DNA from: Octopus sinensis
Taxonomy: Eukaryota
Direction of reading: 5' to 3'
Assembly (NCBI RefSeq): GCF_006345805.1
Contig: NC_043000.1
Coordinates: forward strand, 51,026,001-51,090,000
Length of the DNA: 64,000 bases
The position numbers were made by a program, and so were the translations under genes. Below are positions 16,831-52,575 of this stretch, one piece after another. Position 1 is the first letter of the stretch; the number at the start of each line of letters is the position of its first letter. Under the pieces are notes generated by a model, which was not told where the DNA came from, searched no databases, and worked only from the letters and a program-made list of their open reading frames with translations.

Positions 16831-17067
16831 ACATGCAAGTCTATACATACATACATACATACATATATATATATATATTATATATATATATATATATAAG
16901 TTCTTCTATAAAGCTCAAAACATATGTACCGCAACATCCTTTGTGTCCTGTTTTTCATTTTATTTCATTTGATACATATATCCTCTCACATATGCTACTA
17001 GCTGGCATATACAGGTGCTTACATTTATCAAGTAGTCACCCTGAATTTATATATATATATATATATT

Positions 17068-17377
17068 TGTTGTTGTTGTTGGCATGCAAGTGGCTGAGAA
17101 CTCCACAGACATGTGTACCCTTAATTTAGTTCCAGGGGATATTCAGCATGACACAGTGTGTGACAAAGCTGGCCCTTTGAATTACAGGCACAACAGAAAC
17201 AAGAAGTAAGAGTGAGAGGAAGTTATGGTGAAAGAGTACAGCAGGGTTTGCCACCATCTCCGGCTGGAGGTTTAGGTATTTTTGCTCAATAAACAATCAC
17301 AATGCCTAGTCTGGGAATCGAAATCACGATCCTATGACCTCGAGTCAACTGCCCTAATCACTGGGCCATTGCGCCTC

Positions 17378-17379: not shown

Positions 17380-17442
<63 letters not shown>

Positions 17443-17611
17443 AGTTCTTCTATAAAGCTCAAAACATATGTACCGCAACATCCTTTGTGTCCTGTTTTTC
17501 ATTTTATTTCATTTGATACATATATCCTCTCACATATGCTACTAGCTGGCATATACAGGTGCTTACATTTATCAAGTAGTCACCCTGAATTTATATATAT
17601 ATATATATATT

Positions 17612-17921
17612 TGTTGTTGTTGTTGGCATGCAAGTGGCTGAGAACTCCACAGACATGTGTACCCTTAATTTAGTTCCAGGGGATATTCAGCATGACACAG
17701 TGTGTGACAAAGCTGGCCCTTTGAATTACAGGCACAACAGAAACAAGAAGTAAGAGTGAGAGGAAGTTATGGTGAAAGAGTACAGCAGGGTTTGCCACCA
17801 TTTCCGGCTGGAGGTTTAGGTATTTTTGCTCAATAAACAATCACAATGCCTAGTCTGGGAATCGAAATCACGATCCTATGACCTCGAGTCAACTGCCCTA
17901 ATCACTGGGCCATTGCGCCTC

Positions 17922-23013: not shown

Positions 23014-23391
23014 CTGGTTAAATTGTACAAATGAAACAAAGATAAATAATCAAATCAGCAATATTTAATACACATACACATACAAATATAAACACACATG
23101 CAAACTCATAGACTAACTAAAATGAAATAAAGGAAATAAAAATTTTCCCTGATCTAAGTTAAGAACTATAATCATAGTAAAAAATATTTCGCAGTTATCA
23201 AACACTTTTTTATCATTTCATTGATTCCACAGTAGTAAAAAGAAAATTTGTACTCATACACACAAATATATATGTCAATATGTACAGATGTGAATATCTG
23301 TGTTTGTGTGCATATGTGCATGTTAATGTGTGTGCACATGTGTGTATAAATATATGTATGAATGTATATATCCTTTCTCTCTCTCTCTCTT

Positions 23392-23428
<37 letters not shown>

Positions 23429-23483
23429 GTATGTGTATATATATATGTATGTATATATATATATGTATGTGTATATATATATG

Positions 23484-23524
<41 letters not shown>

Positions 23525-23679
23525 ATATATATATGTGTATATATATATGTATGTATATATATATATATATGTATATATGTGTATATATATATGTATATAT
23601 ATATGTGTATATATATATGTATGTATATATATGTATATATATATGTATGTATATATGTATATATATATGTATATATATA

Positions 23680-23729
<50 letters not shown>
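23392..23729. repeat. Compound (TA)n/(TATG)n microsatellite
   Basis: Direct reading; source of the YIYI-type ORFs. Confidence 0.97.
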
Positions 23730-23732
<3 letters not shown>

Positions 23733-24194: not shown

Positions 24195-24575
24195 AGCATG
24201 ACTGTGTGGTAAGAAGCTTGCTTCCCATCCACATAATTCCGGGTTCAGTCCCATGCCACGGGATCTTGAGCAAGTGCGTTCTATTATAGCCTCATGCCAA
24301 CCAAAGCCTTGTAAGTGAATTTGGTAGATGGAAACTGAAAGAAACCTGTCACAATATGTGTGTCTTTGCGTTTGTCCTCCATCACCACCCAGCAAGAAGT
24401 ACTGATGTGTTTACATCCCTCATAGCCTAGTGGTTTGGCAAAGAGACTGATAGAATAAGTACCAGGCTCAAAAAAATAAGTACTTTGGTTAATTCATTTG
24501 ACTAAAAAACTTGTCCAAGGTAGTGCCCTGACATAGTCACAGTCTAATGACTGAACAAAGTAAAAGAGATAAAAC
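24195..24575 (+). mobile_element. tRNA-headed SINE, family A
   Basis: actgtgtggtaagaagcttgcttccc...ccgggttcagtccca...ggtagatggaaactgaaagaa...gatagaataagtacc...aatgactgaacaaagtaaaagag. Confidence 0.85.
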
Positions 24576-30233: not shown

Positions 30234-30450
30234 TATATCAGTTAGGAAGTAGTTACTCTTAGTCCCTCATGAACCTGTGAGGAATTCTCTTGCTCAGAGT
30301 TCATATATCTTGCATGAAAATATCAGAATCTCTTGCATAAAAGCATCAATACTTTTCTGTTATATTTTTTATCTGGAAAAAAACAAAACAAACAAAAAAA
30401 TCCAACAATTTTATTCTCAGTCACTTGTTTTGTTATGTAACTTTACCAAA

Positions 30451-30840
30451 AGTATGGCTGTGTGGTAAGTAACTTGCTTACCAACCACATGGTTCTGGGT
30501 TCAGTCCCACTGCGTGGCACCTTGGGCAAATGTCTTCTACTATAGCCTTGGGTTGACCAAGGCCTCATGAGTGGATTTGATAGACAGAAACTGAAAGAAG
30601 CCTGTTGTATATATGTATATATATATGTGTGTTTGTGTGTCTGTGTTTGTCCCCCCAACTTTGCTTGACAACCGATGCTGGTGTATTTACGTCTCCATAA
30701 CTTAGCGGTTCGGCAAAAGAATGCGATAGAATAAGTACTAGGCTTACAAAGAATAAGTCCTAGGGTCGATTTGCTCGACTAAAGGTGGTGCTCCAGCATG
30801 GTCGCAGTCAAATGACTGAAACTAGTAAAAGAGTAAAAAG
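30451..30840 (+). mobile_element. tRNA-headed SINE, family A, well-preserved full-length copy
   Basis: tggctgtgtggtaagtaacttgc...gggttcagtcccactgcgtggcaccttgggcaa...ctccagcatggtcgcagtcaaatgactgaaactagtaaaagagtaaaa. Confidence 0.92.
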
Positions 30841-40820: not shown

Positions 40821-41368
40821 TCTTTTTATCTTTTACTTGTTTCAGTCATTAGACTGTGGCCATGCTGGAGCACCACCTTGAAGAATTTATAGTCAAACGT
40901 ATTGACCCCAGTACTATTTTTTTAGAGCCTGGTACTTATTCTAATGATCTCTTTTGCTGAACTGCTAAGTTACATAAACATAAACACATTAACACAGGTT
41001 GTCAAATGGAGGGATGACAGACACAGAGTCACATCCATCCATTCATCCATCCATCCATACATATATACACACATACATACTTACATACATACAAACAAAC
41101 AACGAGCTTTCAGTTTCCGTCTTCCAAATCCACTCTCGAGGCTTTGGCCAGCCCAAAGCTATAGTAGAAGACACTTGCCCAAGGTGCCACGCAGTGGGAT
41201 TGAGCCCAGGTATGGCAAGCTTCTTACCACACAGCCATACCTACACTAACAAAGCTTTGGTTGGACCAGGGCTATAGAAGACTTGCCCAAGGTACTATGC
41301 AGTGAGATTGAACCCAGAACCATGTAGTTGGGAAGCAAACTTTTTACCATACAGCCATGCTTGCACCT
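40821..41368 (-). mobile_element. tRNA-headed SINE, family A, plus a second head fragment
   Basis: ttttacttgtttcagtcattagactgtggccatgctggagcacc...agaagacacttgcccaaggtgccacgcagtggga; head repeated at 41247-41368. Confidence 0.88.
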
Positions 41369-43324
41369 AGAAATTTTAAGATTATATTAATTCTGAAATT
41401 TTTTACTATTTTTTACAGTAATCCATCATAAATGTTTAGATGTATAATAAAGTTAAATTGAACTTTAGACAAACAATTACAATGTTTGTCTAAATTTTCT
41501 GATGATCTGACATGTAACCTCTCAAGGGACTGTCAAAAATGCATATATTTTAAATAGAACCGAAGCAGATTAAAATTAAAGTATTTTTGGTTATATTGTT
41601 TAAAAGTTACAAATGAATATCTCTGTTTGTGTAAATGGTTGTGTGTGTGTGTGTGCATGTGTGCATTTGTGTGTGTGTGTGTCTGTGTGCACATGCATGT
41701 ATGCACAACAAAATATGTGCAAGTTTGCATTTTCATATTTTGAACGCAAAAACTTAGAAATAAGACCTCTTTAAAATTGTGTATTACAGGTTCAAACTTG
41801 TTATTTAACTGTCTTAAGTTTCTATTTTGTTGTCTTACTGACGCCTTTTCATCGTCATCATCATCATTATGTTTATAAAACCAATTGCGTTATTTATAAA
41901 CTACCTCTTTTATATACAAACATTATTAGTTCTTTATGTTTGATAAAAGAGAAATAAATGCTTATTGAAAAATATAATTTCACTGTCACTAAAATCTGTA
42001 TCAGCTGATTCTTGTTCTCATTTCATATCTGCTATTTTTCTGCTTTTCCTTTTTCTTTTTATCTTTTTCACATTTATTCTTACTCAGCAAAATAAAGTAC
42101 AACTATTTTTTTTTAAAAATAACCTTTTTGTGTTTTTAAGTTTTGTAATTAAAATCAGTCTTTCGTTGAATGTTTTTCCGAAATAAAAGTAAACGAATAT
42201 CAGCTGCAAATTGTCATGAATTTGAGCATTTTATCAAACAAATTTTAAATTGATTTATTGAAATTTTATAGCACTTACCCAATGGCTTCAGAAATATTAG
42301 AAGTGAGAACTTTCCAAAATTGTCATTCATGGTTTTTAATCTGAGAATGTTAGCCATATCATTTCTCTCATTACTAAGTGATTGTTCGTGGTTTCAAGTT
42401 TTCTGAGAATTTTTGGAATTTTTCTCTGATAGATTCACTTCAGTGTCAAATTCACCTATCATTACATGATTGTCTTAGATCTGTGACATTTTCCTTTTGT
42501 TATTCCTCTAATTTGGATATTCCATCACATCTACTTAAGCGGATAACATAATGCGAAAGTATTTTATTTACGTGATTATGGGTATTGAGGTATGTAAGTT
42601 TTGTTTACAATTAATTTTTATAATAATGAGTCTTCATACATATAGTGAAGAAACAAATATTTCCACCTCTTTTTTAGTAGTTTTAAATCTCAGAAGGCAG
42701 CAACAAATATTTATTTGACAACATAACTATCTTTGTAATATCTTACAATTTATTGTTATGTTGAAACATATTTGTGTATGGGCATTAGTTTAAGCATTGA
42801 ACATTAACTACTAAATATGTATATATGCAGTATACATATGAATATATAAATTTTCATTTGTCTTTACATGTGTCTTTACATTAAACATAGTATTATTTTT
42901 CACTCTTAGTGGTTTCCATATTATTGCAGTCTTTCACAATATTTGTATAACTTGGTTACTGACACTCTTCATGACTATATCTTCCTAAGCTCTGTGAATA
43001 GTGATTCTTTGTGAAAATGTATTTTCCTCCCTTTTATCAGTAGCTCTGTATTTTGTATCTTTTCAAATAGCTAATAATGAAATGCAAGAGAAAAAAGTTG
43101 GTTGATATTGTATATTTTAATTTTATTTATTTTTATTTTTACATTATGTATGCGCATTTTTCAAGCAAAAAAATATTGGATGGTTGCCTCCAAATGGCTT
43201 AACATTAAAATACCTTACTGTTATAATTGCCCTACACATTCACGTGGATCAAATAAATTGATGTTGGGGAGTTATAAAGTGCATATATATATATATAGCA
43301 AATACAAATCAAGATATCTTCACA

Positions 43325-43432
43325 TATAGATATTACTACTGTTCCATTATAGCCATCATTTCAAGTTTTGTGCTGACTTGGCAGTCATTTGATGATGGTT
43401 ATAATGGAACAGCAGTCAACTATAACTACATC
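43325..43432 (+). ncRNA. Candidate pri-miRNA-like hairpin, unverified
   Basis: 22-bp contiguous stem (43339-60 with 43391-412) including 2 G:U pairs, extended basal stem, and CATC 17 nt downstream; no match to miRNAs I know. Confidence 0.4.
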
Positions 43433-44242
43433 TAGGTCTATGTCGATTTATCTACCTGTCTGTCTTTTCACACACTCTACTATGTTTATTGAGCACTCTT
43501 TATTTTGTTCATAGTACTACTTGGAAACATGCCATACTACGTATTTTTTTTTTTGTATACATTCATATTTTTAATCTTGGAAATAACAATGTGCCTATGA
43601 GTGCATGTTTTCTAAAAAGTACTGAATATTGGCCAACAGCCATCTCCCGTACTTATTTATGTAAATATCATATTTATATTTCTACCCAGTACTTAGCCAT
43701 ATAAGTAACGTTATTGTAAAGATTCCTTGTGATGGCAAAGTTACTTGTTAATTTACCTAACTGAAGCATTCACTATATGAGAGAGGGTGAGAGAGAGATC
43801 ATTGTAATTAATGAGGGAATGTTATTTACATCACTAGTCACTTCACCAATGCCACAGATCATTATTCCAGGAAACAGCTCATTATTATAATGGCCACACT
43901 TATAATCTTTCCAGACAATATGTGTTGGTCTATATTTATTTATCTATATGCCTTCACTTATTTAGTTATCCTTGATAGATCATCATTGGTACAGATCTGT
44001 TTCTCTCTCATCCTGTCTGGAACAATCATTCATATTCATTATGTTTATGAATAAGTTTTTCTCTACACATTTGTCTTATTAGAAATGTTAATTTAATATG
44101 TTGCTTTATCTTTTTCCATAAGATATCGTAATCTTCTATGCATTCGTTGCACAGCCTACAGCACTTTTACTAGTTCTCACTTTTTAAGCTATTTGGTTTA
44201 TGTGTTCAAAATACCTATCTACATTGAATTTAAAAGGAGTCT

Positions 44243-44401
44243 AGGACATTTATCCCCATAGACAATAACTCCCCCACCAATGGCAATAACTCCTGAAGAC
44301 AACAAATAACGATTTAAAACTTCTTAATATATTAGAGAGGGGGTAATTAACTAAGGGGGTTAAATGTCCTGGGGGTAGTTGTCGTTGGGGCAAATTGTCC
44401 T
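44243..44401. mobile_element. Small palindromic MITE-like element with internal sub-repeats
   Basis: Left aggacatttatcccc...acaataactcccc; right ggggttaaatgtcct, ggggtagttgtc, ggggcaaattgtcct in inverted orientation. Confidence 0.6.
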
Positions 44402-45700
44402 GATACAGTTAAATGACCAACTTTTTTAGTCTTGTGTCATATTTCTCTCTTTTCTTTTCTGAAATATTTTAAATAATAGATATATTTACTTTTACATATT
44501 CCACATCAAATTGTATATATCATCCCACACTAAATGTGTACATATTATACTTAGCAATCCTATTATCAGAGGAATGGAATCTAACTTTCAAAGACTGAGC
44601 TCTTTGTCTGAGATACTTTGTTTAATATCTATAGTTGAAATCCCTTTCATAAAGGGGACTTGTGTTTGTTTGTTCATCTAGATGTTCAGAAAGGTTAAAA
44701 TATAAAGTGAAAATATAAAATTCAGACACATACACAATAGAATGTCGTAGTTAAGATACCACTTCCAATAAAGATGTACATCCTGTCATATATTTTTCAA
44801 GATTTGCTCTTATGAATATAAGTTTCTGCTGCGATATCTTTATTCTATATTCAGGCACATAAGGTAATTACTGAAATGCTGCTCTGTTACTGCAGCTCTA
44901 GGTTGGATGTTGATGTTGTGAAGTTATTTGCTCAATCAAAAAAATAATATCTTAAATATTAATATTTTATACTTTATGGAATGTCATTCCATCAGCTGGC
45001 TAGGAAATATATTTATTTAGAGAAAGATCCCTCAGTTAAATGATAAAGCTTTTCCATATGGAAACCAAATAATTCAACAAATTCTACAAATATCAACATC
45101 AAAATTTATCATATAAACAAAAATAAACTGTAATCTTATAAACTAATTGAATATTCTAGCAAGATGAAATTCCAAGATGCTCATGTTTGATGCTTGATGC
45201 TAACAGCTACATAATTTTGTGTATTTCTTTGCATACAAACATCTCAAATGTTCCTTTTTTTTTTGTCATGCTGATGACCTTTTAGGTTAAGCAATGAAAA
45301 TATTTACAGTTTAGGTTTGTTGGTGAGAAGTTATCTCTCAAATGTCACTGGATTTCTTTAAACAATGTTTCTGCTATTTTATGAGATGTTGGCAATTATT
45401 ACACAAATGATGTATATTAATCATTTCACAATCAATGAAAACCTGGTTAAATTAGGGTGAGTTAACCAAGAAATCAAATTAATGCTATTTTCAGTTGACA
45501 AAGAATGAATTATAGTTATACTATTTATCTTAATCGTTTGTGTATAAAGTGTTTGCTGTTTCACAAACTGCAAAATGTTTGCCTATGTGTGAGGATGTAT
45601 GTTCTGCAATAAAGAGACGTATGAATGACTGCTGTATACCTGTGTGCATGTAAATGACTTTGTATTCCATAATAGGGATTGAAGTGAAATTTGACCTGAC

Positions 45701-46106
45701 TCTCTTTTACTCTTTTACTTGTTTCAGTCATGTGACTGTGGCCATGGTGGAGCACCGCCTTTTAGTCGAGCAAATCGACCCCAGGACTTATTCTTTGTAA
45801 GCCTAGTGCTTATTCTATCGGTCACTTTTGCTGAACCGCTAAGTTACGGGGATGTAAACACACCAGCATCAGTTGTCAAACAATGTTGGGGGGGGGGGAA
45901 ATTAACACACAAACATACATATATATATATATACACACACACATACATGATAGGCTTCTTTTCAGTTTCCATCTACCATATCCACTCACAAAGCTTTGGT
46001 TGGCCCGAGGCTATAGTAGAAGACACTTGCCCAAGGTGCCACACAGTGGGACTGAACCCAGAACCATGTGGTTCGTGAGCAAGCTACTTATCACACAGCC
46101 ACTCCT
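45701..46106 (-). mobile_element. tRNA-headed SINE, family A, full-length
   Basis: Reverse complement of the 30451-30840 type, from ctcttttactcttttacttg to cacacagccactcct. Confidence 0.92.
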
Positions 46107-49100
46107 ACTCATTCATTTTCCAAATGACTATTTCTTATTCCTTGTTTAGCTCAATGTATTTACTATTTTTGCAACAAATTGTATATCCTGTGGTGCTTTC
46201 CTTGTGGGAGTCAGCAATTTAAAGTTCATTACTATATATTTGTTTAATGTATAAACACTGTAGAGATAAAAAAACAAAAATTGCATACAGTTTTTGTAGT
46301 TTATGTTTCAATGTAAAATGGAATACTTTGTTGTGTGGAATGCAGGTAGTAATAGCTTTTCCCTGTTTTTCTTATGTAGTTGTTGTAGGGGTTATGGTGG
46401 AAGTTGGTAAGATGGTTATATTTGGTACATGCACTTGGTTCTTTGTTATGCATTAATGAGGCTAACAACCTAAGACAGTATTTTGGCATGTAATGCAAAT
46501 CACCTTATATGTAATGTAACTCACCTTTGATTAGAACATGTGTATTTTGTTTGTATAGACCATGTGGAAAAGTAATGCTGTTTGGATTGTATATTTTGGA
46601 ATACTACCTATCCAACCCATGCTAGCATGGAAAGCATATGTAGAATAATGATAATGACGTTTTGGTGTTTGTGCATTTGACTAGGTTTGACTAGTTGCAG
46701 GAATTTAGTTAATTTGAAAAGACTAATTTTTGTATTTTGTTCTAATTGCATTTATTTATTTCTTTAAACATGTATTCATGAACAATTGTTCCTCTGTACA
46801 TTTGAAAGAATCTAGTAATGTCTTTTAGTAGATCACAAAACAGCCTCATTCAAAAACTGAACGATCACAAATAATTGTCAGTTTTGATATAAAAACAAGT
46901 AGAAAAAATATATTGTAATGGTACGTTCTGTTTTGTAAATTTACTAAAATTATATCTTAAATGTTCAGTTTATCTGTATTACTATTATATCAGTTGCTAA
47001 CTTGTTTGCCTGAGCACCAAAACATTTAAGAATTTGATGGTTGAATATGATTACTCACACTTTAAAGGTCATGTTTCCATGCTAAGATATAGATTGTTCT
47101 ATAAATTCCCAATTCCTATATCATCTTGTTAAGGATTTTCTTATTTTTGTATTTGATTATCTGTTTCTAAATCAGGATATGTTAGATCAGTCTTAGGTAT
47201 TTTGTTCATAATTTTTCTTGGTTTATTTTGATTTTATTCCACAACCCTATCTTCCATTTCTCTTCTCATTGCCAGAATTTGCCACCTTGATGTATTTGTA
47301 TTTGAACATAAGCAAATTTTATACTTCACTGTGTGCATGAGTGGTTTCAATGAACTTCTCATCTCTCCTCTTTTCTTGTCACATTCATATATTTAAAACC
47401 CCGTGAGGAAAACATACTATCTTTGCATTTTCCTTATTTCATATTACACTTTCTGAAGCCAAGTTGCCATGAAAAATGCTTTATTTTATCTCTTTCTTTA
47501 GGAGTAACATCTATGAAATATGACATTGCTTCTCAATGTTTTCTTTTCATATCATATATCTTACACCAAATTCCACTTATATCTATACTGGTTATCAATC
47601 ATTCCAAACTTGCCACTTCCTAGTTTATGTTTCAAGTCATGTTATATTGATATTTTGCTTGTTGTGGGGCTTGAATAGTAACTTTCATGTGTTCAAGGTC
47701 TTTTGAAAAACAAAAATAAAAATGAGATGCCAAATTGATAGAGAAATGCATAAAATATTATTTAGCATTATTTATTGTCAAATCTGCAATGTTAGCATTA
47801 GGCATCGTTGATTTCTATATTGTTTTTATTCATTTTATTACATTAATGTTAATGGTTCTTTCTGAAACTAGAGAAGGTGTCATATGTTAGTTAAAGGTGT
47901 TTCTGATAATAAATTATTGTACATAGTTTCACAGTTAAAGCAAAAGTATGTTTTCCTTATTGCTTCTTAAGAATTAAAAATATTCAAATTTAAATAAATT
48001 CAATGAAATACTAACTTGCAAATGTATATTTCAGCGAATTGATGCTGCTTTAAACCTGCTAAACTAATGTTATATTCAACCAAAAATTTAGATGTGAGTT
48101 GTAGATTGCGCTAAAGTTACTGTTTACAGAACTTTGAAATTATACAATTGCCATAATAATTTTACCCCTACTCAGACACACCATTGGAGTTGTTTTGATG
48201 ATATTTGACTGTATTGTAAGATGATATCATAGCTTTCCTGTTTGAAAGGGTGACATCAAATAGAACACCAGCTGTGTGTGCATGGCATGTGTATGTGTGC
48301 ATGCACTTTTATAAATGAATTGTCAGCCTAAACCAAATCAATATCATTTCTCTAAAATAAAAAAAAAAATGAAAATTCAATCTATGATTTTAAAAATTCT
48401 GGAATAAAGAACTTTCAGATAGATGTAAAATAAAGCAGATATACAGTGCATGTATCGTTTCTTACTTTTTAATACTGTAGATTGCATTAGTTACCATTTG
48501 CAAATGTGGATGACTTGAAACAGAAATATGATTGCATTTGTCTAGATAATCCTAGTATTTCAACTAATTCTCAACTGATGATAGAAACCAGGTAATATTA
48601 CAAGTTAACAAATCAGAACTGATCACAATATTCTATAGAGATAAGAGAGAAAAACAACAGAATTATGGGCCAATTTCAAAATGAATGAATATCACATTGT
48701 TATGTTGTTCAATATAATGCTAATAGTTGTCAGCAGAGAAAATTCTACTTATAAAGCAGTCAGCAGGAATGGCTGTTACATAAATTATATTTCTTTGTGA
48801 TAAAAGCACAGTCTAGACAATATCCTCATAAAACTCTTGATTCACATCTCTGCACCAAAGATATATTATCTTTGAAATTGCAGTCCTTAGCATTATTATT
48901 TTGGTGGAGGTGATGTGTGAGTGAATAAGTGGTCATAATTGTTTTCAAAACTTCTGCTTATTTTGTTTGACAGTCAGTATATTATGGAAATGTAAGCAAA
49001 TGGGAAAATATGTAATATAGTCATGAAACAATACTCTAAATGGGTTTACTTGATTTCTAAAAAGTTAAGGAAGGTAAAAAGCTGTATAGTAACATTAGTT

Positions 49101-50295: not shown

Positions 50296-50308
50296 ATATA
50301 CACACAGT

Positions 50309-50342
<34 letters not shown>

Positions 50343-50351
50343 CATATATTA

Positions 50352-50387
<36 letters not shown>

Positions 50388-50586
50388 TGTATGTATGTGT
50401 GTGAGTTTGTGTGTATGTGTATTTACTTTTCTACAACATGGTCCTGGAGCTGATTTCATTGTGCAATAACCTTAGGCAAGTGCTTTCACTATGGACCAGT
50501 ACAGTGGGAAAGGAGGTTTGGGTTTTGGGAAACTAAGAAAGCTGCTCATACACGCATGCATGTGTGTGTGTGTGTGTGTATGTATA

Positions 50587-50637
<51 letters not shown>

Positions 50638-50890
50638 GTATATGTATATATATATTATATATATATATATGCATATGTATGTATATATATATATATGTAT
50701 ATATGCATATGTATGTATATATATATTATATATATATATGTATATATGCATATGTATGTATATGTATTATATATATAATATATATATATATATATGTATG
50801 TATATGTATATATATATTTATATATATATATATATATATATGCATATGTATGTATATGTATATATATATGCATATGTATGTATATATATA
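50296..50890. repeat. Compound (TA)n/(TATG)n/(TG)n microsatellite cluster with recurring gcatatgtatgtata motif
   Basis: Direct reading; the motif occurs 5 times in 50670-50885. Confidence 0.95.
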
Positions 50891-52575
50891 GATAAATTTG
50901 TGTGTGTGTGCAATCATCTTTTTTTTGTTTCTCTATATTTATTGCCTGTAACTTTTTCAAATTATGACAGTGCGATAGTATGGCCACGATTCAATAACTG
51001 AAATAAGTACAAACAGAATACACACACACATACACACACACACACATATATGCATATATATGTGTGTGTGATTAAACATTTTTTTTCTATATTATTATAA
51101 CATAGGACATGGATTTCCCATATCAAAGAATAGAAATGATATACTGATTATGTTAAATTGTAGACATTATGATATATGATTCAAATGGTGCTAGAGTTTG
51201 CATAGTCTTTCATCCTTACAAGGTCAATAAAAAATATATCGGTAACATACTGCTGTAAGTGGAGATATTAGTTTGCTACTGCAAGCATAAAAGGATGTGC
51301 CTTCACTATATGTTATCACCATGTTTCAAGCTTACTGTGAGTGTGTAGTATGTATATATATATGTGTGTATGTGTATATATATGTATATATATATGCTCA
51401 TTTATTTATATACATATAAGTATTTGTATACACACAGACATACATCCACACACATATTTATATATATATGCATGGTATACTCTCGTGCACACACACATAT
51501 ATATGAAGTATATATATAATAACACATACACACACATATATAAATACACACATACACGTAATATTAAAATTAACAGGATTCTTTTGCTTTCTATTGTGAT
51601 ATTTTACCTTTGCTTAAATATGCAACAGCTAGAATACTAACCTCCCACGCTCTTCGTTCTATGATATTGCATACTAATATCTCATAGAGTATTCACTATT
51701 TTCTATCAATGCTGTCGCTACTGCGGATGGTGAGGCCTCTGTTAGCTTCTACAGATGACGATAATCAATAAATTCATGTGTTATGAGTAGTTTGTGCCTG
51801 TCGTCTACATTTTCAGAAATGTAATAAAGATATAAGAATAAATCAGAATAGCTGAATGTGGTAGAAGCAGTATTAGTTCCATACTTGCTAATGTGAATGT
51901 TGTGCAGCAATGCTTGTGATGTTCTGCTGTTTCGTTAGTGTGAGATACTGGAAATCAAATAATCATAGTAGTGCTGTTAGTAAAAATATAATAGTAGGAG
52001 TAATTGTAGTTACTTCAGCTTTGGTATTAATAGATCTCTGTGAAGGCAGTAGTTTTTGTTACTGTAAGACATTAGTAGCACAACTGACTGAGGTTCTTTC
52101 CTGTATAAATTCTCTCTTAGCTGAAAAACCATTTTTTCCCACCCCTTATTCTCTTATCCTTATCAGGCTTTTATTCCACATTTTTCATCTCTCAACATAA
52201 AAAATTCTACATCCATTCCTAAGTCATTTCCTCTGTCTTTCTTTCATTCTCCTGCTTTCATTTTCTCCCTCTTCCTCTTTTTCATATTTCAGTGACTTCA
52301 CGTGACTTTAAGCTGTTCATTCACCATGAAAAAGAATTTTCACCTTTCTCTCCTTTTCTGTTTTTTTTTTCTTTCATAACATAATAATGACATGTAAGGA
52401 ACAAAATTACAAAATATATATTCAATTAACTATTAGGTAGCCCATTGTCTTAGTTTCCTTACTGAGGGAAAATATTGCATAAAGGTCCCTTGTACATACA
52501 ACTTATTTTTCTACCTTATATCTATAGAAAGACAAATGTGTGCACACACACACACACCACACATGTACAAACATA

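What the first reader, a model, noticed from the sequence alone, without database searches (positions are those of the whole stretch)
43325..43432. pri-miRNA-like hairpin in unique sequence
ctgttccattatagccatcatt (43339-60) pairs at all 22 positions with gatgatggttataatggaacag (43391-412). Both non-Watson-Crick positions are G:U wobbles on the plus strand (A:C mismatches on minus). Pairing continues basally (act/agt, then tatag/ctata) to about 30+ bp. The 30-nt loop contains UGUG, and a CNNC motif (CATC, 43429-32) lies 17 nt past the 3' arm, as for Microprocessor substrates. I recognise no known miRNA; coleoids have a large lineage-specific miRNA expansion. Alternatively it is an ADAR substrate or an old MITE core.
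Basis: partly seen in the sequence, partly recalled or inferred. Interest (0 to 1): 0.75.

Follow-up and report, generated by a model that had tools for sequence, protein, structure and literature searches.

The report
Lone hairpin-forming inverted repeat, octopus DNA
A real, single-copy 82-base inverted repeat in non-coding octopus-like DNA would fold into a strong RNA hairpin, but such hairpins are common and nothing found here marks it as a microRNA gene.

Summary
43339-43360 pairs with 43391-43412 at all 22 positions (20 Watson-Crick, 2 G:U on the + strand). The 108-nt stretch folds to -42.6 kcal/mol (z = -8). It is the second-strongest hairpin in non-repetitive sequence of the window and is single-copy there.

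The extras are weaker. The outer tatag/ctata pairing is no better than chance. The true repeat is 43335-43366 / 43385-43416, with 3 substitutions and a 2-nt indel between the arms. The next arm difference (43338/43413) favours the minus strand. CNNC at +17 has a 7.7% chance rate. UGUG (14% chance rate) lies away from the canonical apical position. There is no basal UG.

Nothing identifies it as a known miRNA. The best Rfam match is 32 bits against a threshold of 70, on both strands. No paper holds the arm sequences. No expression or conservation data could be reached.

The window is octopod-like, repeat-rich and shows no coding signal. Helices of this kind occur about once per 28 kb, which implies 10^4-10^5 per genome against 164 annotated octopus miRNA genes.

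The most likely reading is a young, neutral inverted repeat made by template switching or a small inverted duplication. A lineage-specific miRNA is possible (about 5%) but unsupported. No MITE hallmarks were found.

The parts
43335..43366 (.). Left arm of the inverted repeat (ACTACTGTTCCATTATAGCCATCATTTCAAGT).
   Evidence: Global alignment of the left half with the reverse complement of the right half; MFE pairing.
43385..43416 (.). Right arm of the inverted repeat. It differs from the left arm by 3 substitutions and one 2-nt indel; MFE pairs of this arm start at 43387.
43339..43360 (+). It pairs 22/22 with 43391-43412, with G:U at 43352 and 43360.
43391..43412 (+).
43367..43384 (+). Spacer / apical region. 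It contains UGUG (43369-72) and a small 4-5 bp secondary stem whose centre is offset from the main symmetry axis.
43325..43329 (+). tatag, proposed basal pairing with ctata at 43420-24. Chance-level and not stable in a longer context.
43429..43432 (+). CATC (CNNC), 17 nt past 43412. Two further CNNC motifs start at 43417 and 43426.
   Evidence: chance rate 7.7% for a 3-position window.

Best explanation
This is a short, single-copy inverted repeat: arms of about 30-32 nt, an 18-nt spacer, 82 bp in all (43335-43416). It lies in a 4-kb unique stretch of repeat-rich DNA from an octopod-type genome, with no detectable coding sequence.

The most likely origin is one mutational step that copied a nearby segment in reverse complement, either template switching during replication or a small inverted duplication. 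It has since drifted: 3 substitutions and a 2-nt indel separate the arms.

Shown here: the repeat, its statistical reality, its uniqueness within 64 kb, its limits, and its predicted fold. Inferred: the mutational origin and the neutrality.

If the region is transcribed, the RNA would form a hairpin of about -42 kcal/mol. Drosha/Dicer or ADAR could act on it incidentally, which would make it proto-miRNA raw material. It is most probably not a working miRNA gene.
For: - The repeat is real and compact. It has 22/22 core pairing and z = -8, and complementarity ends at 43335/43416.
- It is unique. Self-BLAST of 42300-44500 against the window matches only itself in inverted orientation. No copy exists in 20 kb of O. 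vulgaris DNA.
- MITE hallmarks are absent. There is no TSD at the repeat ends. A textbook MITE in the same window (56695-56906, TA|CAGTG...CACTG|TA, about 100-nt arms) looks quite different.
- The context is non-coding. No Pfam hits on 20 ORF pieces. No Rfam family reaches gathering score anywhere in the window. Neighbouring ORFs are absent from the protein collection.
- The base rate is high. Three such helices occur in 84 kb of this kind of DNA.
- Template switching is documented to create perfect hairpins of miRNA size in one step. Only 0.9% (57/6,054) of such hairpins in human genic regions are annotated as miRNAs (PMC10710096).
Against: - No outgroup sequence could be obtained, so the template-switch origin is inferred from form alone.
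- Genome-wide copy number is untested; only 84 kb was sampled.
- Neutrality is assumed, not shown.
- CNNC at +17 and UGUG near the apical junction coincide with a joint chance probability of roughly 1%. That is what a Microprocessor substrate would show.
- The persistently negative AT skew of the window hints weakly that the + strand may be transcribed.
Confidence: 0.6

Rival explanations
1. It is a genuine, probably young and lineage-specific, octopod miRNA gene. A Pol II transcript (perhaps an intron on the + strand) folds, Drosha cuts near 43338/43339 and 43414/43415 or near 43347/43348 (13 bp from the 43334/43335 junction), and Dicer releases a duplex of about 22 nt.
For: - The hairpin is of pre-miRNA size and stability, with at least 16 paired positions and a spacer of at least 8 nt.
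- CNNC lies 17 nt past the 3' arm and UGUG lies close to the apical junction of the MFE structure.
- The sequence is unique.
- Octopuses have an unusually large set of novel miRNAs, and that set is said to be an underestimate (PMC9699675).
- Negative AT skew is compatible with + strand transcription.
Against: - The prior is below about 0.5%: 164 annotated genes against an extrapolated 10^4-10^5 comparable helices per genome.
- A 20-22 bp uninterrupted helix is atypical of established animal miRNAs (general knowledge).
- The solid stem is about 30 bp, and reaching 35 bp needs chance-level pairs.
- There is no basal UG.
- There is no neighbouring miRNA or known family.
- The arm sequences appear in no paper text.
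- One candidate seed match (GGAACAGA) is listed as a non-seed k-mer in Data S2 of PMC9699675. That file is truncated, so this is weak evidence.
Confidence: 0.05
2. It is a relic or solo copy of a small transposable element (a MITE or a TE-internal palindrome) whose other copies lie outside the sampled DNA.
For: - Its size (82-100 bp) and palindromic form resemble short MITEs such as the human MADE1 elements that gave rise to mir-548 (general knowledge).
- The window is full of mobile elements, including a real MITE at 56.7 kb and several SINE copies.
- A trivial TA/TA flank is possible if the element is taken as 43327-43422.
Against: - There is no second copy in the 64-kb window or in 20 kb of O. 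vulgaris.
- There is no TSD at the real repeat ends. The TA/TA variant needs outer pairs that are at chance level.
- It lacks the CAGT-type termini of the bona fide MITE in the window.
Confidence: 0.2
3. It is a transcribed dsRNA element with a non-miRNA role: an ADAR editing substrate or a Dicer-dependent endo-siRNA hairpin in an intron or UTR.
For: - An almost perfect duplex of about 29 bp is long enough for ADAR or Dicer.
- Coleoids edit RNA heavily in neural tissue (PMC9699675 abstract).
- The arm differences are all transitions, two or three of them G:U on the + strand.
Against: - Transcription is unknown.
- No exon or gene was detectable in the window.
- Transitions are expected under neutral decay.
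- Known endo-siRNA hairpins are much longer (general knowledge).
Confidence: 0.1

Closest known systems
Template-switch-generated hairpins (TSM loci; Monttinen, Frilander and Loytynoja 2023, PMC10710096)
   Same: A short, near-perfect reverse-complement copy of adjacent unique sequence, of miRNA-hairpin size, arising without a transposon.
   Different: The ancestral, pre-event state has not been seen, so the mechanism is inferred from form only. The documented cases are primate.
Novel octopus/coleoid miRNA genes (Ovu-Novel families, MirGeneDB; Zolotarov et al. 2022, PMC9699675)
   Same: A hairpin of the right size and stability in an octopod-type genome. CNNC is at +17 and UGUG lies in the apical region.
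   Different: There is no read evidence, no second-species presence and no sequence match. The helix is more perfect than is usual for established animal miRNAs, and the lower stem is weak.
Rfam RF03344 mir-5365 (nematode family)
   Same: Best Rfam alignment: 32 bits, E = 4e-4 in a 3-kb search. It shares CUGUUCCAU / GGAACA.
   Different: The score is far below the gathering score of 70. The minus strand scores nearly as well (26.7 bits), so it is a generic hairpin match. The family is reported from nematodes and, in one study, a tick.
Tc1/mariner-type MITE in the same window (56695-56906)
   Same: Both are palindromic and fold into hairpins far beyond shuffles.
   Different: The MITE has arms of about 100 nt, CAGT...ACTG termini and TA target-site duplications. 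The finding has arms of 30-32 nt, no such termini and no TSD.

Membership tests
Animal miRNA gene (MirGeneDB-style criteria) | Hairpin with at least 16 complementary positions between the two arms and a loop of at least 8 nt | tested here: met
   22/22 core pairing and a spacer of 18-30 nt, depending on the structure taken.
Animal miRNA gene (MirGeneDB-style criteria) | Reads of 20-26 nt from both arms, offset to give 2-nt 3' overhangs (Drosha and Dicer cuts) | not testable with these tools
   No small-RNA read data are accessible.
Animal miRNA gene (MirGeneDB-style criteria) | Homogeneous 5' ends of the mature reads | not testable with these tools
   No read data.
Animal miRNA gene (MirGeneDB-style criteria) | Presence in a second species (the criterion used for octopus novel families in PMC9699675) | not testable with these tools
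   No cephalopod genome could be searched by DNA. The route through neighbouring ORFs failed. The 21-mer scans of the metagenome and prokaryote-genome collections hit only a coding motif in uncultured bacteria, mostly CPR/Patescibacteria, and the viral scan hit nothing.
Animal miRNA gene (MirGeneDB-style criteria) | Microprocessor geometry: a stem of about 35 bp between single-stranded flanks and an apical loop | tested here: inconclusive
   The solid stem is about 30 bp (43335-43366). Reaching 35 bp or more needs tatag/ctata, which is chance-level and re-pairs in a longer context.
Animal miRNA gene (MirGeneDB-style criteria) | Primary-sequence motifs (basal UG, apical UGU/GUG, 3' CNNC) | tested here: inconclusive
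CNNC is present at +17 (7.7% by chance). Basal UG is absent. These motifs are enhancers, not requirements.
Known miRNA or RNA family (Rfam 15) | Score at or above the family's gathering threshold | tested here: not met
   The best match is mir-5365 at 32 bits against 70. No family reaches gathering score anywhere in the window. Cephalopod-specific MirGeneDB families are probably not in Rfam, so this does not exclude them.
MITE / small DNA transposon | Target-site duplication flanking the terminal inverted repeats | tested here: not met
   No 2-10 bp TSD exists at 43335/43416, 43325/43424 or 43339/43412. Only a trivial TA appears if the ends are set inside TATA.
MITE / small DNA transposon | Multiple dispersed copies in the genome | tested here: inconclusive
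   One copy in the 64-kb window and none in 20 kb of O. vulgaris. This sample can only exclude very high copy numbers.
Template-switch mutation product | Near-perfect reverse-complement copy of an adjacent segment within a short distance, in otherwise unique sequence | tested here: met
   Arms 43335-66 / 43385-416 with an 18-nt spacer. Flanks are non-complementary and unique.
Template-switch mutation product | Outgroup or ancestral sequence lacking the repeat, with the change explained by one switch event | not testable with these tools
   No orthologous sequence is available.
ADAR substrate | Transcribed dsRNA with A-to-G mismatches between RNA and genome | not testable with these tools
   Only the dsRNA potential is shown. 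No RNA data.

The most novel reading that the evidence does not exclude
The hairpin is a very young, species- or genus-specific octopod miRNA born from a template-switch event. It would be missing from the published complement because that set required presence in two octopus species. If so, it would be a caught-in-the-act example of how the coleoid miRNA expansion was fed.
Probability: 0.04. Interest if true: 0.4.

Novelty: new member of a known kind. Interest (0 to 1): 0.15.

Why it matters
As it stands it matters little. It is one of probably tens of thousands of short inverted repeats in an octopus-sized genome. Its value is as a worked example showing that pri-miRNA-like shape plus one or two sequence motifs does not discriminate miRNA genes from background hairpins in this kind of DNA. 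If small-RNA data showed precise processing, it would add one young miRNA to the coleoid expansion and would be a candidate case of de novo birth by template switching outside primates.

Tried and rejected
1. Known-family identity. An Rfam E-value scan of 42-45 kb gave only sub-threshold generic hairpin hits on both strands. A gathering-threshold scan of the whole window gave nothing.

2. Literature.
- Arm substrings in DNA and RNA alphabets, in two registers, were found in no paper.
- The supplements of Zolotarov 2022 that are held as text contain no miRNA sequences.
- Seed-match k-mers gave only one 'non-seed' listing in a truncated file.
- No MirGeneDB 3.0 supplements are held.

3. Relatives by DNA. 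The 21-mer arm pattern hit 13 metagenome and 3 prokaryote-genome contigs and no viral ones. All are single-arm matches inside a conserved coding motif (..RLMMAIMEQDS..) of uncultured bacteria, mostly CPR/Patescibacteria, with no hairpin. This is coincidence.

4. Reaching the orthologous locus through neighbouring ORFs. Twenty exact look-ups and one homology search found nothing.

5. Taxon. A SINE-derived ORF hit one O. vulgaris predicted protein. Its 20-kb locus shares several repeat families with the window at 77-92% identity. This supports an octopod origin but gives no orthologue.

6. Coding context. No Pfam hit on 20 ORF pieces. My recollection that 52.9-53.6 kb resembles a mariner transposase was not confirmed.

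7. Extended palindrome or MITE. Outer-flank complementarity is at chance level and there is no TSD.

8. The bacterial promoter/terminator scan is irrelevant for this genome.

9. A Helitron 3' hairpin was considered and rejected. The stem is AT-rich and far too long, and no CTRR|T end follows it.

Full report
**1. The observation**

The sequence is as described. CTGTTCCATTATAGCCATCATT (43339-43360) pairs with GATGATGGTTATAATGGAACAG (43391-43412) at all 22 positions. Twenty pairs are Watson-Crick and two are G:U on the + strand (43352:43399 and 43360:43391).

With up to 3 mismatches, the 22-mer occurs in the 64-kb window only as these two arms; shuffles give 0.

| Stretch folded | Strand | MFE (kcal/mol) | z-score | Shuffles as good |
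|---|---|---|---|---|
| 43325-43432 | + | -42.6 | -7.97 | 0 of 200 |
| 43325-43432 | - | -40.5 | -7.44 | 0 of 200 |

I slid a 110-nt window over both strands and dropped microsatellite-like windows. The locus ranks second of about 22,700 windows. The first is a much longer inverted repeat at 56.7 kb. The hairpin is therefore real and far beyond what composition gives.

**2. Limits and anatomy**

- I aligned the left half with the reverse complement of the right half. The arms are 43335-43366 and 43385-43416.
- They differ by three substitutions (43338/43413, 43352/43399, 43365/43388) and one 2-nt indel (UU at 43359-60). The spacer is 18 nt.
- Outside 43335-43416 the flanks are complementary only at chance level: local score 9.5, shuffle mean 9.4, and 35% of genomic controls do as well.
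- The tatag/ctata 'basal stem' is therefore not part of the repeat. In a 181-nt context the fold pairs those bases differently.
- The + strand MFE reads, from base to apex: 3 bp, a 1x1 A.C mismatch, 20 bp, a UU bulge, 6 bp, a 4x3 internal loop, 4 bp, and a 5-nt loop.
- That gives a solid helix of about 30 bp, somewhat short of the roughly 35 bp preferred by Microprocessor (quoted in PMC10710096).

**3.

- CNNC (CATC, 43429-32) is indeed 17 nt past 43412. CNNC also starts at 43417 and 43426. The chance of a CNNC in any 3-position window of this DNA is 7.7%.
- UGUG is at 43369-72. A UGUG occurs in 14% of 30-nt stretches here, and UGU or GUG in 58%.
- There is no UG at -14.
- The strand argument (both wobbles are G:U on +) holds for the 22-bp core. 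The adjacent difference, 43338 A / 43413 C, is a mismatch on + and a G:U on -. The two strands differ by only 2 kcal/mol.
- Together these details are worth perhaps a five- to ten-fold likelihood ratio for a Microprocessor substrate. That figure is my estimate.

**4. Context**

- The window is 30% G+C. It is packed with (TA)n/(TG)n arrays and interspersed repeats.
- A SINE-derived ORF at 30446-30778 (-) matches a single protein named 'Hypothetical predicted protein [Octopus vulgaris]' at 77% identity.
- That protein's 20-kb locus (GCA_951406725.2, OX597836.1; L017) shares several repeat families with the window at 77-92% identity. An octopod origin is therefore supported. The species is not determined.
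- No coding signal was found. Twenty of the least repetitive open frames gave no Pfam hit. No Rfam family reaches its gathering score and no tRNA is present.
- The hairpin sits in a 4-kb stretch (about 41.7-45.7 kb) that matches nothing else in the window or in L017.
- AT skew is negative across almost the whole window (-0.05, and -0.106 in that 4-kb stretch). In L017 the + strand gene has -0.025 and the - strand gene +0.02. This weakly hints that the + strand is the sense strand of a long transcription unit. It is no more than a hint.

**5. Searches for identity or relatives**

- *Rfam.* In the E-value scan the best match is the mir-5365 family (reported from nematodes and, in one study, a tick) at 32 bits against a threshold of 70. 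The minus strand scores 26.7. This is a generic hairpin match.
- *Papers.* No paper in the library holds any of ten arm substrings.
- *Octopus miRNA paper.* The supplements of PMC9699675 that are held as text contain no miRNA sequences. One possible seed match (GGAACAGA) is listed there as a non-seed k-mer, but the file is truncated.
- *DNA collections.* A 21-mer covering either arm hit 16 contigs in the metagenome and prokaryote-genome collections. All are one-arm matches inside a conserved coding motif of uncultured bacteria, mostly CPR/Patescibacteria, with no hairpin. This is coincidence.
- *Orthologous locus.* Attempts to reach it through neighbouring ORFs failed.
- Conservation and expression, the two decisive criteria, therefore remain untested.

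**6. Base rate**

- I counted uninterrupted helices of at least 18 bp (G:U allowed, loop 3-60 nt) in non-low-complexity sequence. There are two loci in the window (this one and the 56.7-kb repeat) and one in the 20-kb O. vulgaris locus.
- That is about one per 28 kb. For a genome of a few gigabases (size from my own knowledge) it implies 10^4-10^5 such helices.
- O. vulgaris has 164 annotated miRNA genes (PMC9699675).
- In humans, only 0.9% (57/6,054) of template-switch-made hairpins of suitable size in genic regions are annotated miRNAs (PMC10710096).
- The prior that such a hairpin is a miRNA gene is therefore well below 1%. With the motif evidence I put it near 5%. This allows for young, unannotated, species-specific loci, which the published set excluded by design.

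**7. What it most likely is**

The form is a short, near-perfect reverse-complement copy of adjacent unique sequence, with non-complementary flanks, no TSD and no second copy. This is what a replication template switch or a small inverted duplication leaves behind (PMC10710096).

The MITE alternative lacks its hallmarks. The window holds a genuine Tc1/mariner-type MITE for contrast: 56695-56906, TA|CAGTGTATG...CATACACTG|TA, arms of about 100 nt, DNA fold -87.9 kcal/mol, z -22.6.

If the region is transcribed, the RNA would be a plausible incidental substrate for Drosha/Dicer or ADAR. That part is inference.

**8. Verdict**

It is not supported as a gene.
- The feature is ordinary, a new instance of a known kind. 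Interest is low unless small-RNA reads or orthologues say otherwise.
- The decisive tests are genome-wide BLAST, cross-species alignment and mapping of the existing octopus small-RNA libraries. All are simple but lie outside the collections available here.

Noticed in passing
window 56695-56906: A textbook Tc1/mariner-type MITE: TA|CAGTGTATGTTCAAACAC...GTGTTTGAACATACACTG|TA, arms of about 100 nt at about 89% complementarity, a 27-nt centre, DNA fold -87.9 kcal/mol (z -22.6). It is the strongest non-microsatellite hairpin in the window. No copy was seen in the 20-kb O. vulgaris locus.
   Followed up: partly
window 30455-30838, 45700-46111, 55190-55584, 40821-41209, 24199-24359, 57282-57405: Copies and fragments of one SINE-like repeat family, 82-91% identical to copies in O. 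vulgaris OX597836.1 (L017). One O. vulgaris 'hypothetical predicted protein' (P0001) is simply an ORF within such a repeat, so it is likely an annotation artefact.
   Followed up: partly
window 16847-17146 and 17391-17690: A 544-bp-period tandem duplication, 300 nt at 98% identity. Each unit ends in a (CA)n(TA)n microsatellite, and a third partial unit lies near 17914.
   Followed up: partly
window 62001-64000 (also 23390-23730, 50300-50900): Extremely AT-rich TA/TATG-type microsatellite arrays (G+C 8.9% over the last 2 kb). They dominate every naive hairpin or inverted-repeat ranking (368 inverted pairs) and must be masked before any hairpin scan.
   Followed up: yes
window 52901-53551: An isolated G+C-rich island (up to 56% G+C in 150-nt windows) with broken open frames on the + strand. 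It reminded me of a decayed mariner-type transposase, but four pieces gave no Pfam hit at E <= 0.1.
   Followed up: partly
L017 426-483 (O. vulgaris OX597836.1, inside the span of the RabGAP-TBC gene): A perfect 27-bp palindrome with a 4-nt loop in non-repetitive sequence. It is another example of how common strong hairpins are in octopus DNA.
   Followed up: no
whole window; strongest in 41703-45700: T exceeds A on the + strand almost throughout (AT skew -0.05, and -0.106 around the hairpin). The two genes in L017 show the same sign relative to their sense strands. This may mark a long + strand transcription unit (an intron), but the calibration rests on two genes only.
   Followed up: partly
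L001-L016 (metagenome and prokaryote-genome contigs): The 21-mer CTGTTCCATTATAGCCATCAT is conserved on the antisense strand of a coding motif (..RLMMAIMEQDS.FGT..) in several uncultured-bacterial contigs, mostly CPR/Patescibacteria. This is a pure coincidence with the octopus hairpin arm, and a caution for exact-word searches.
   Followed up: yes
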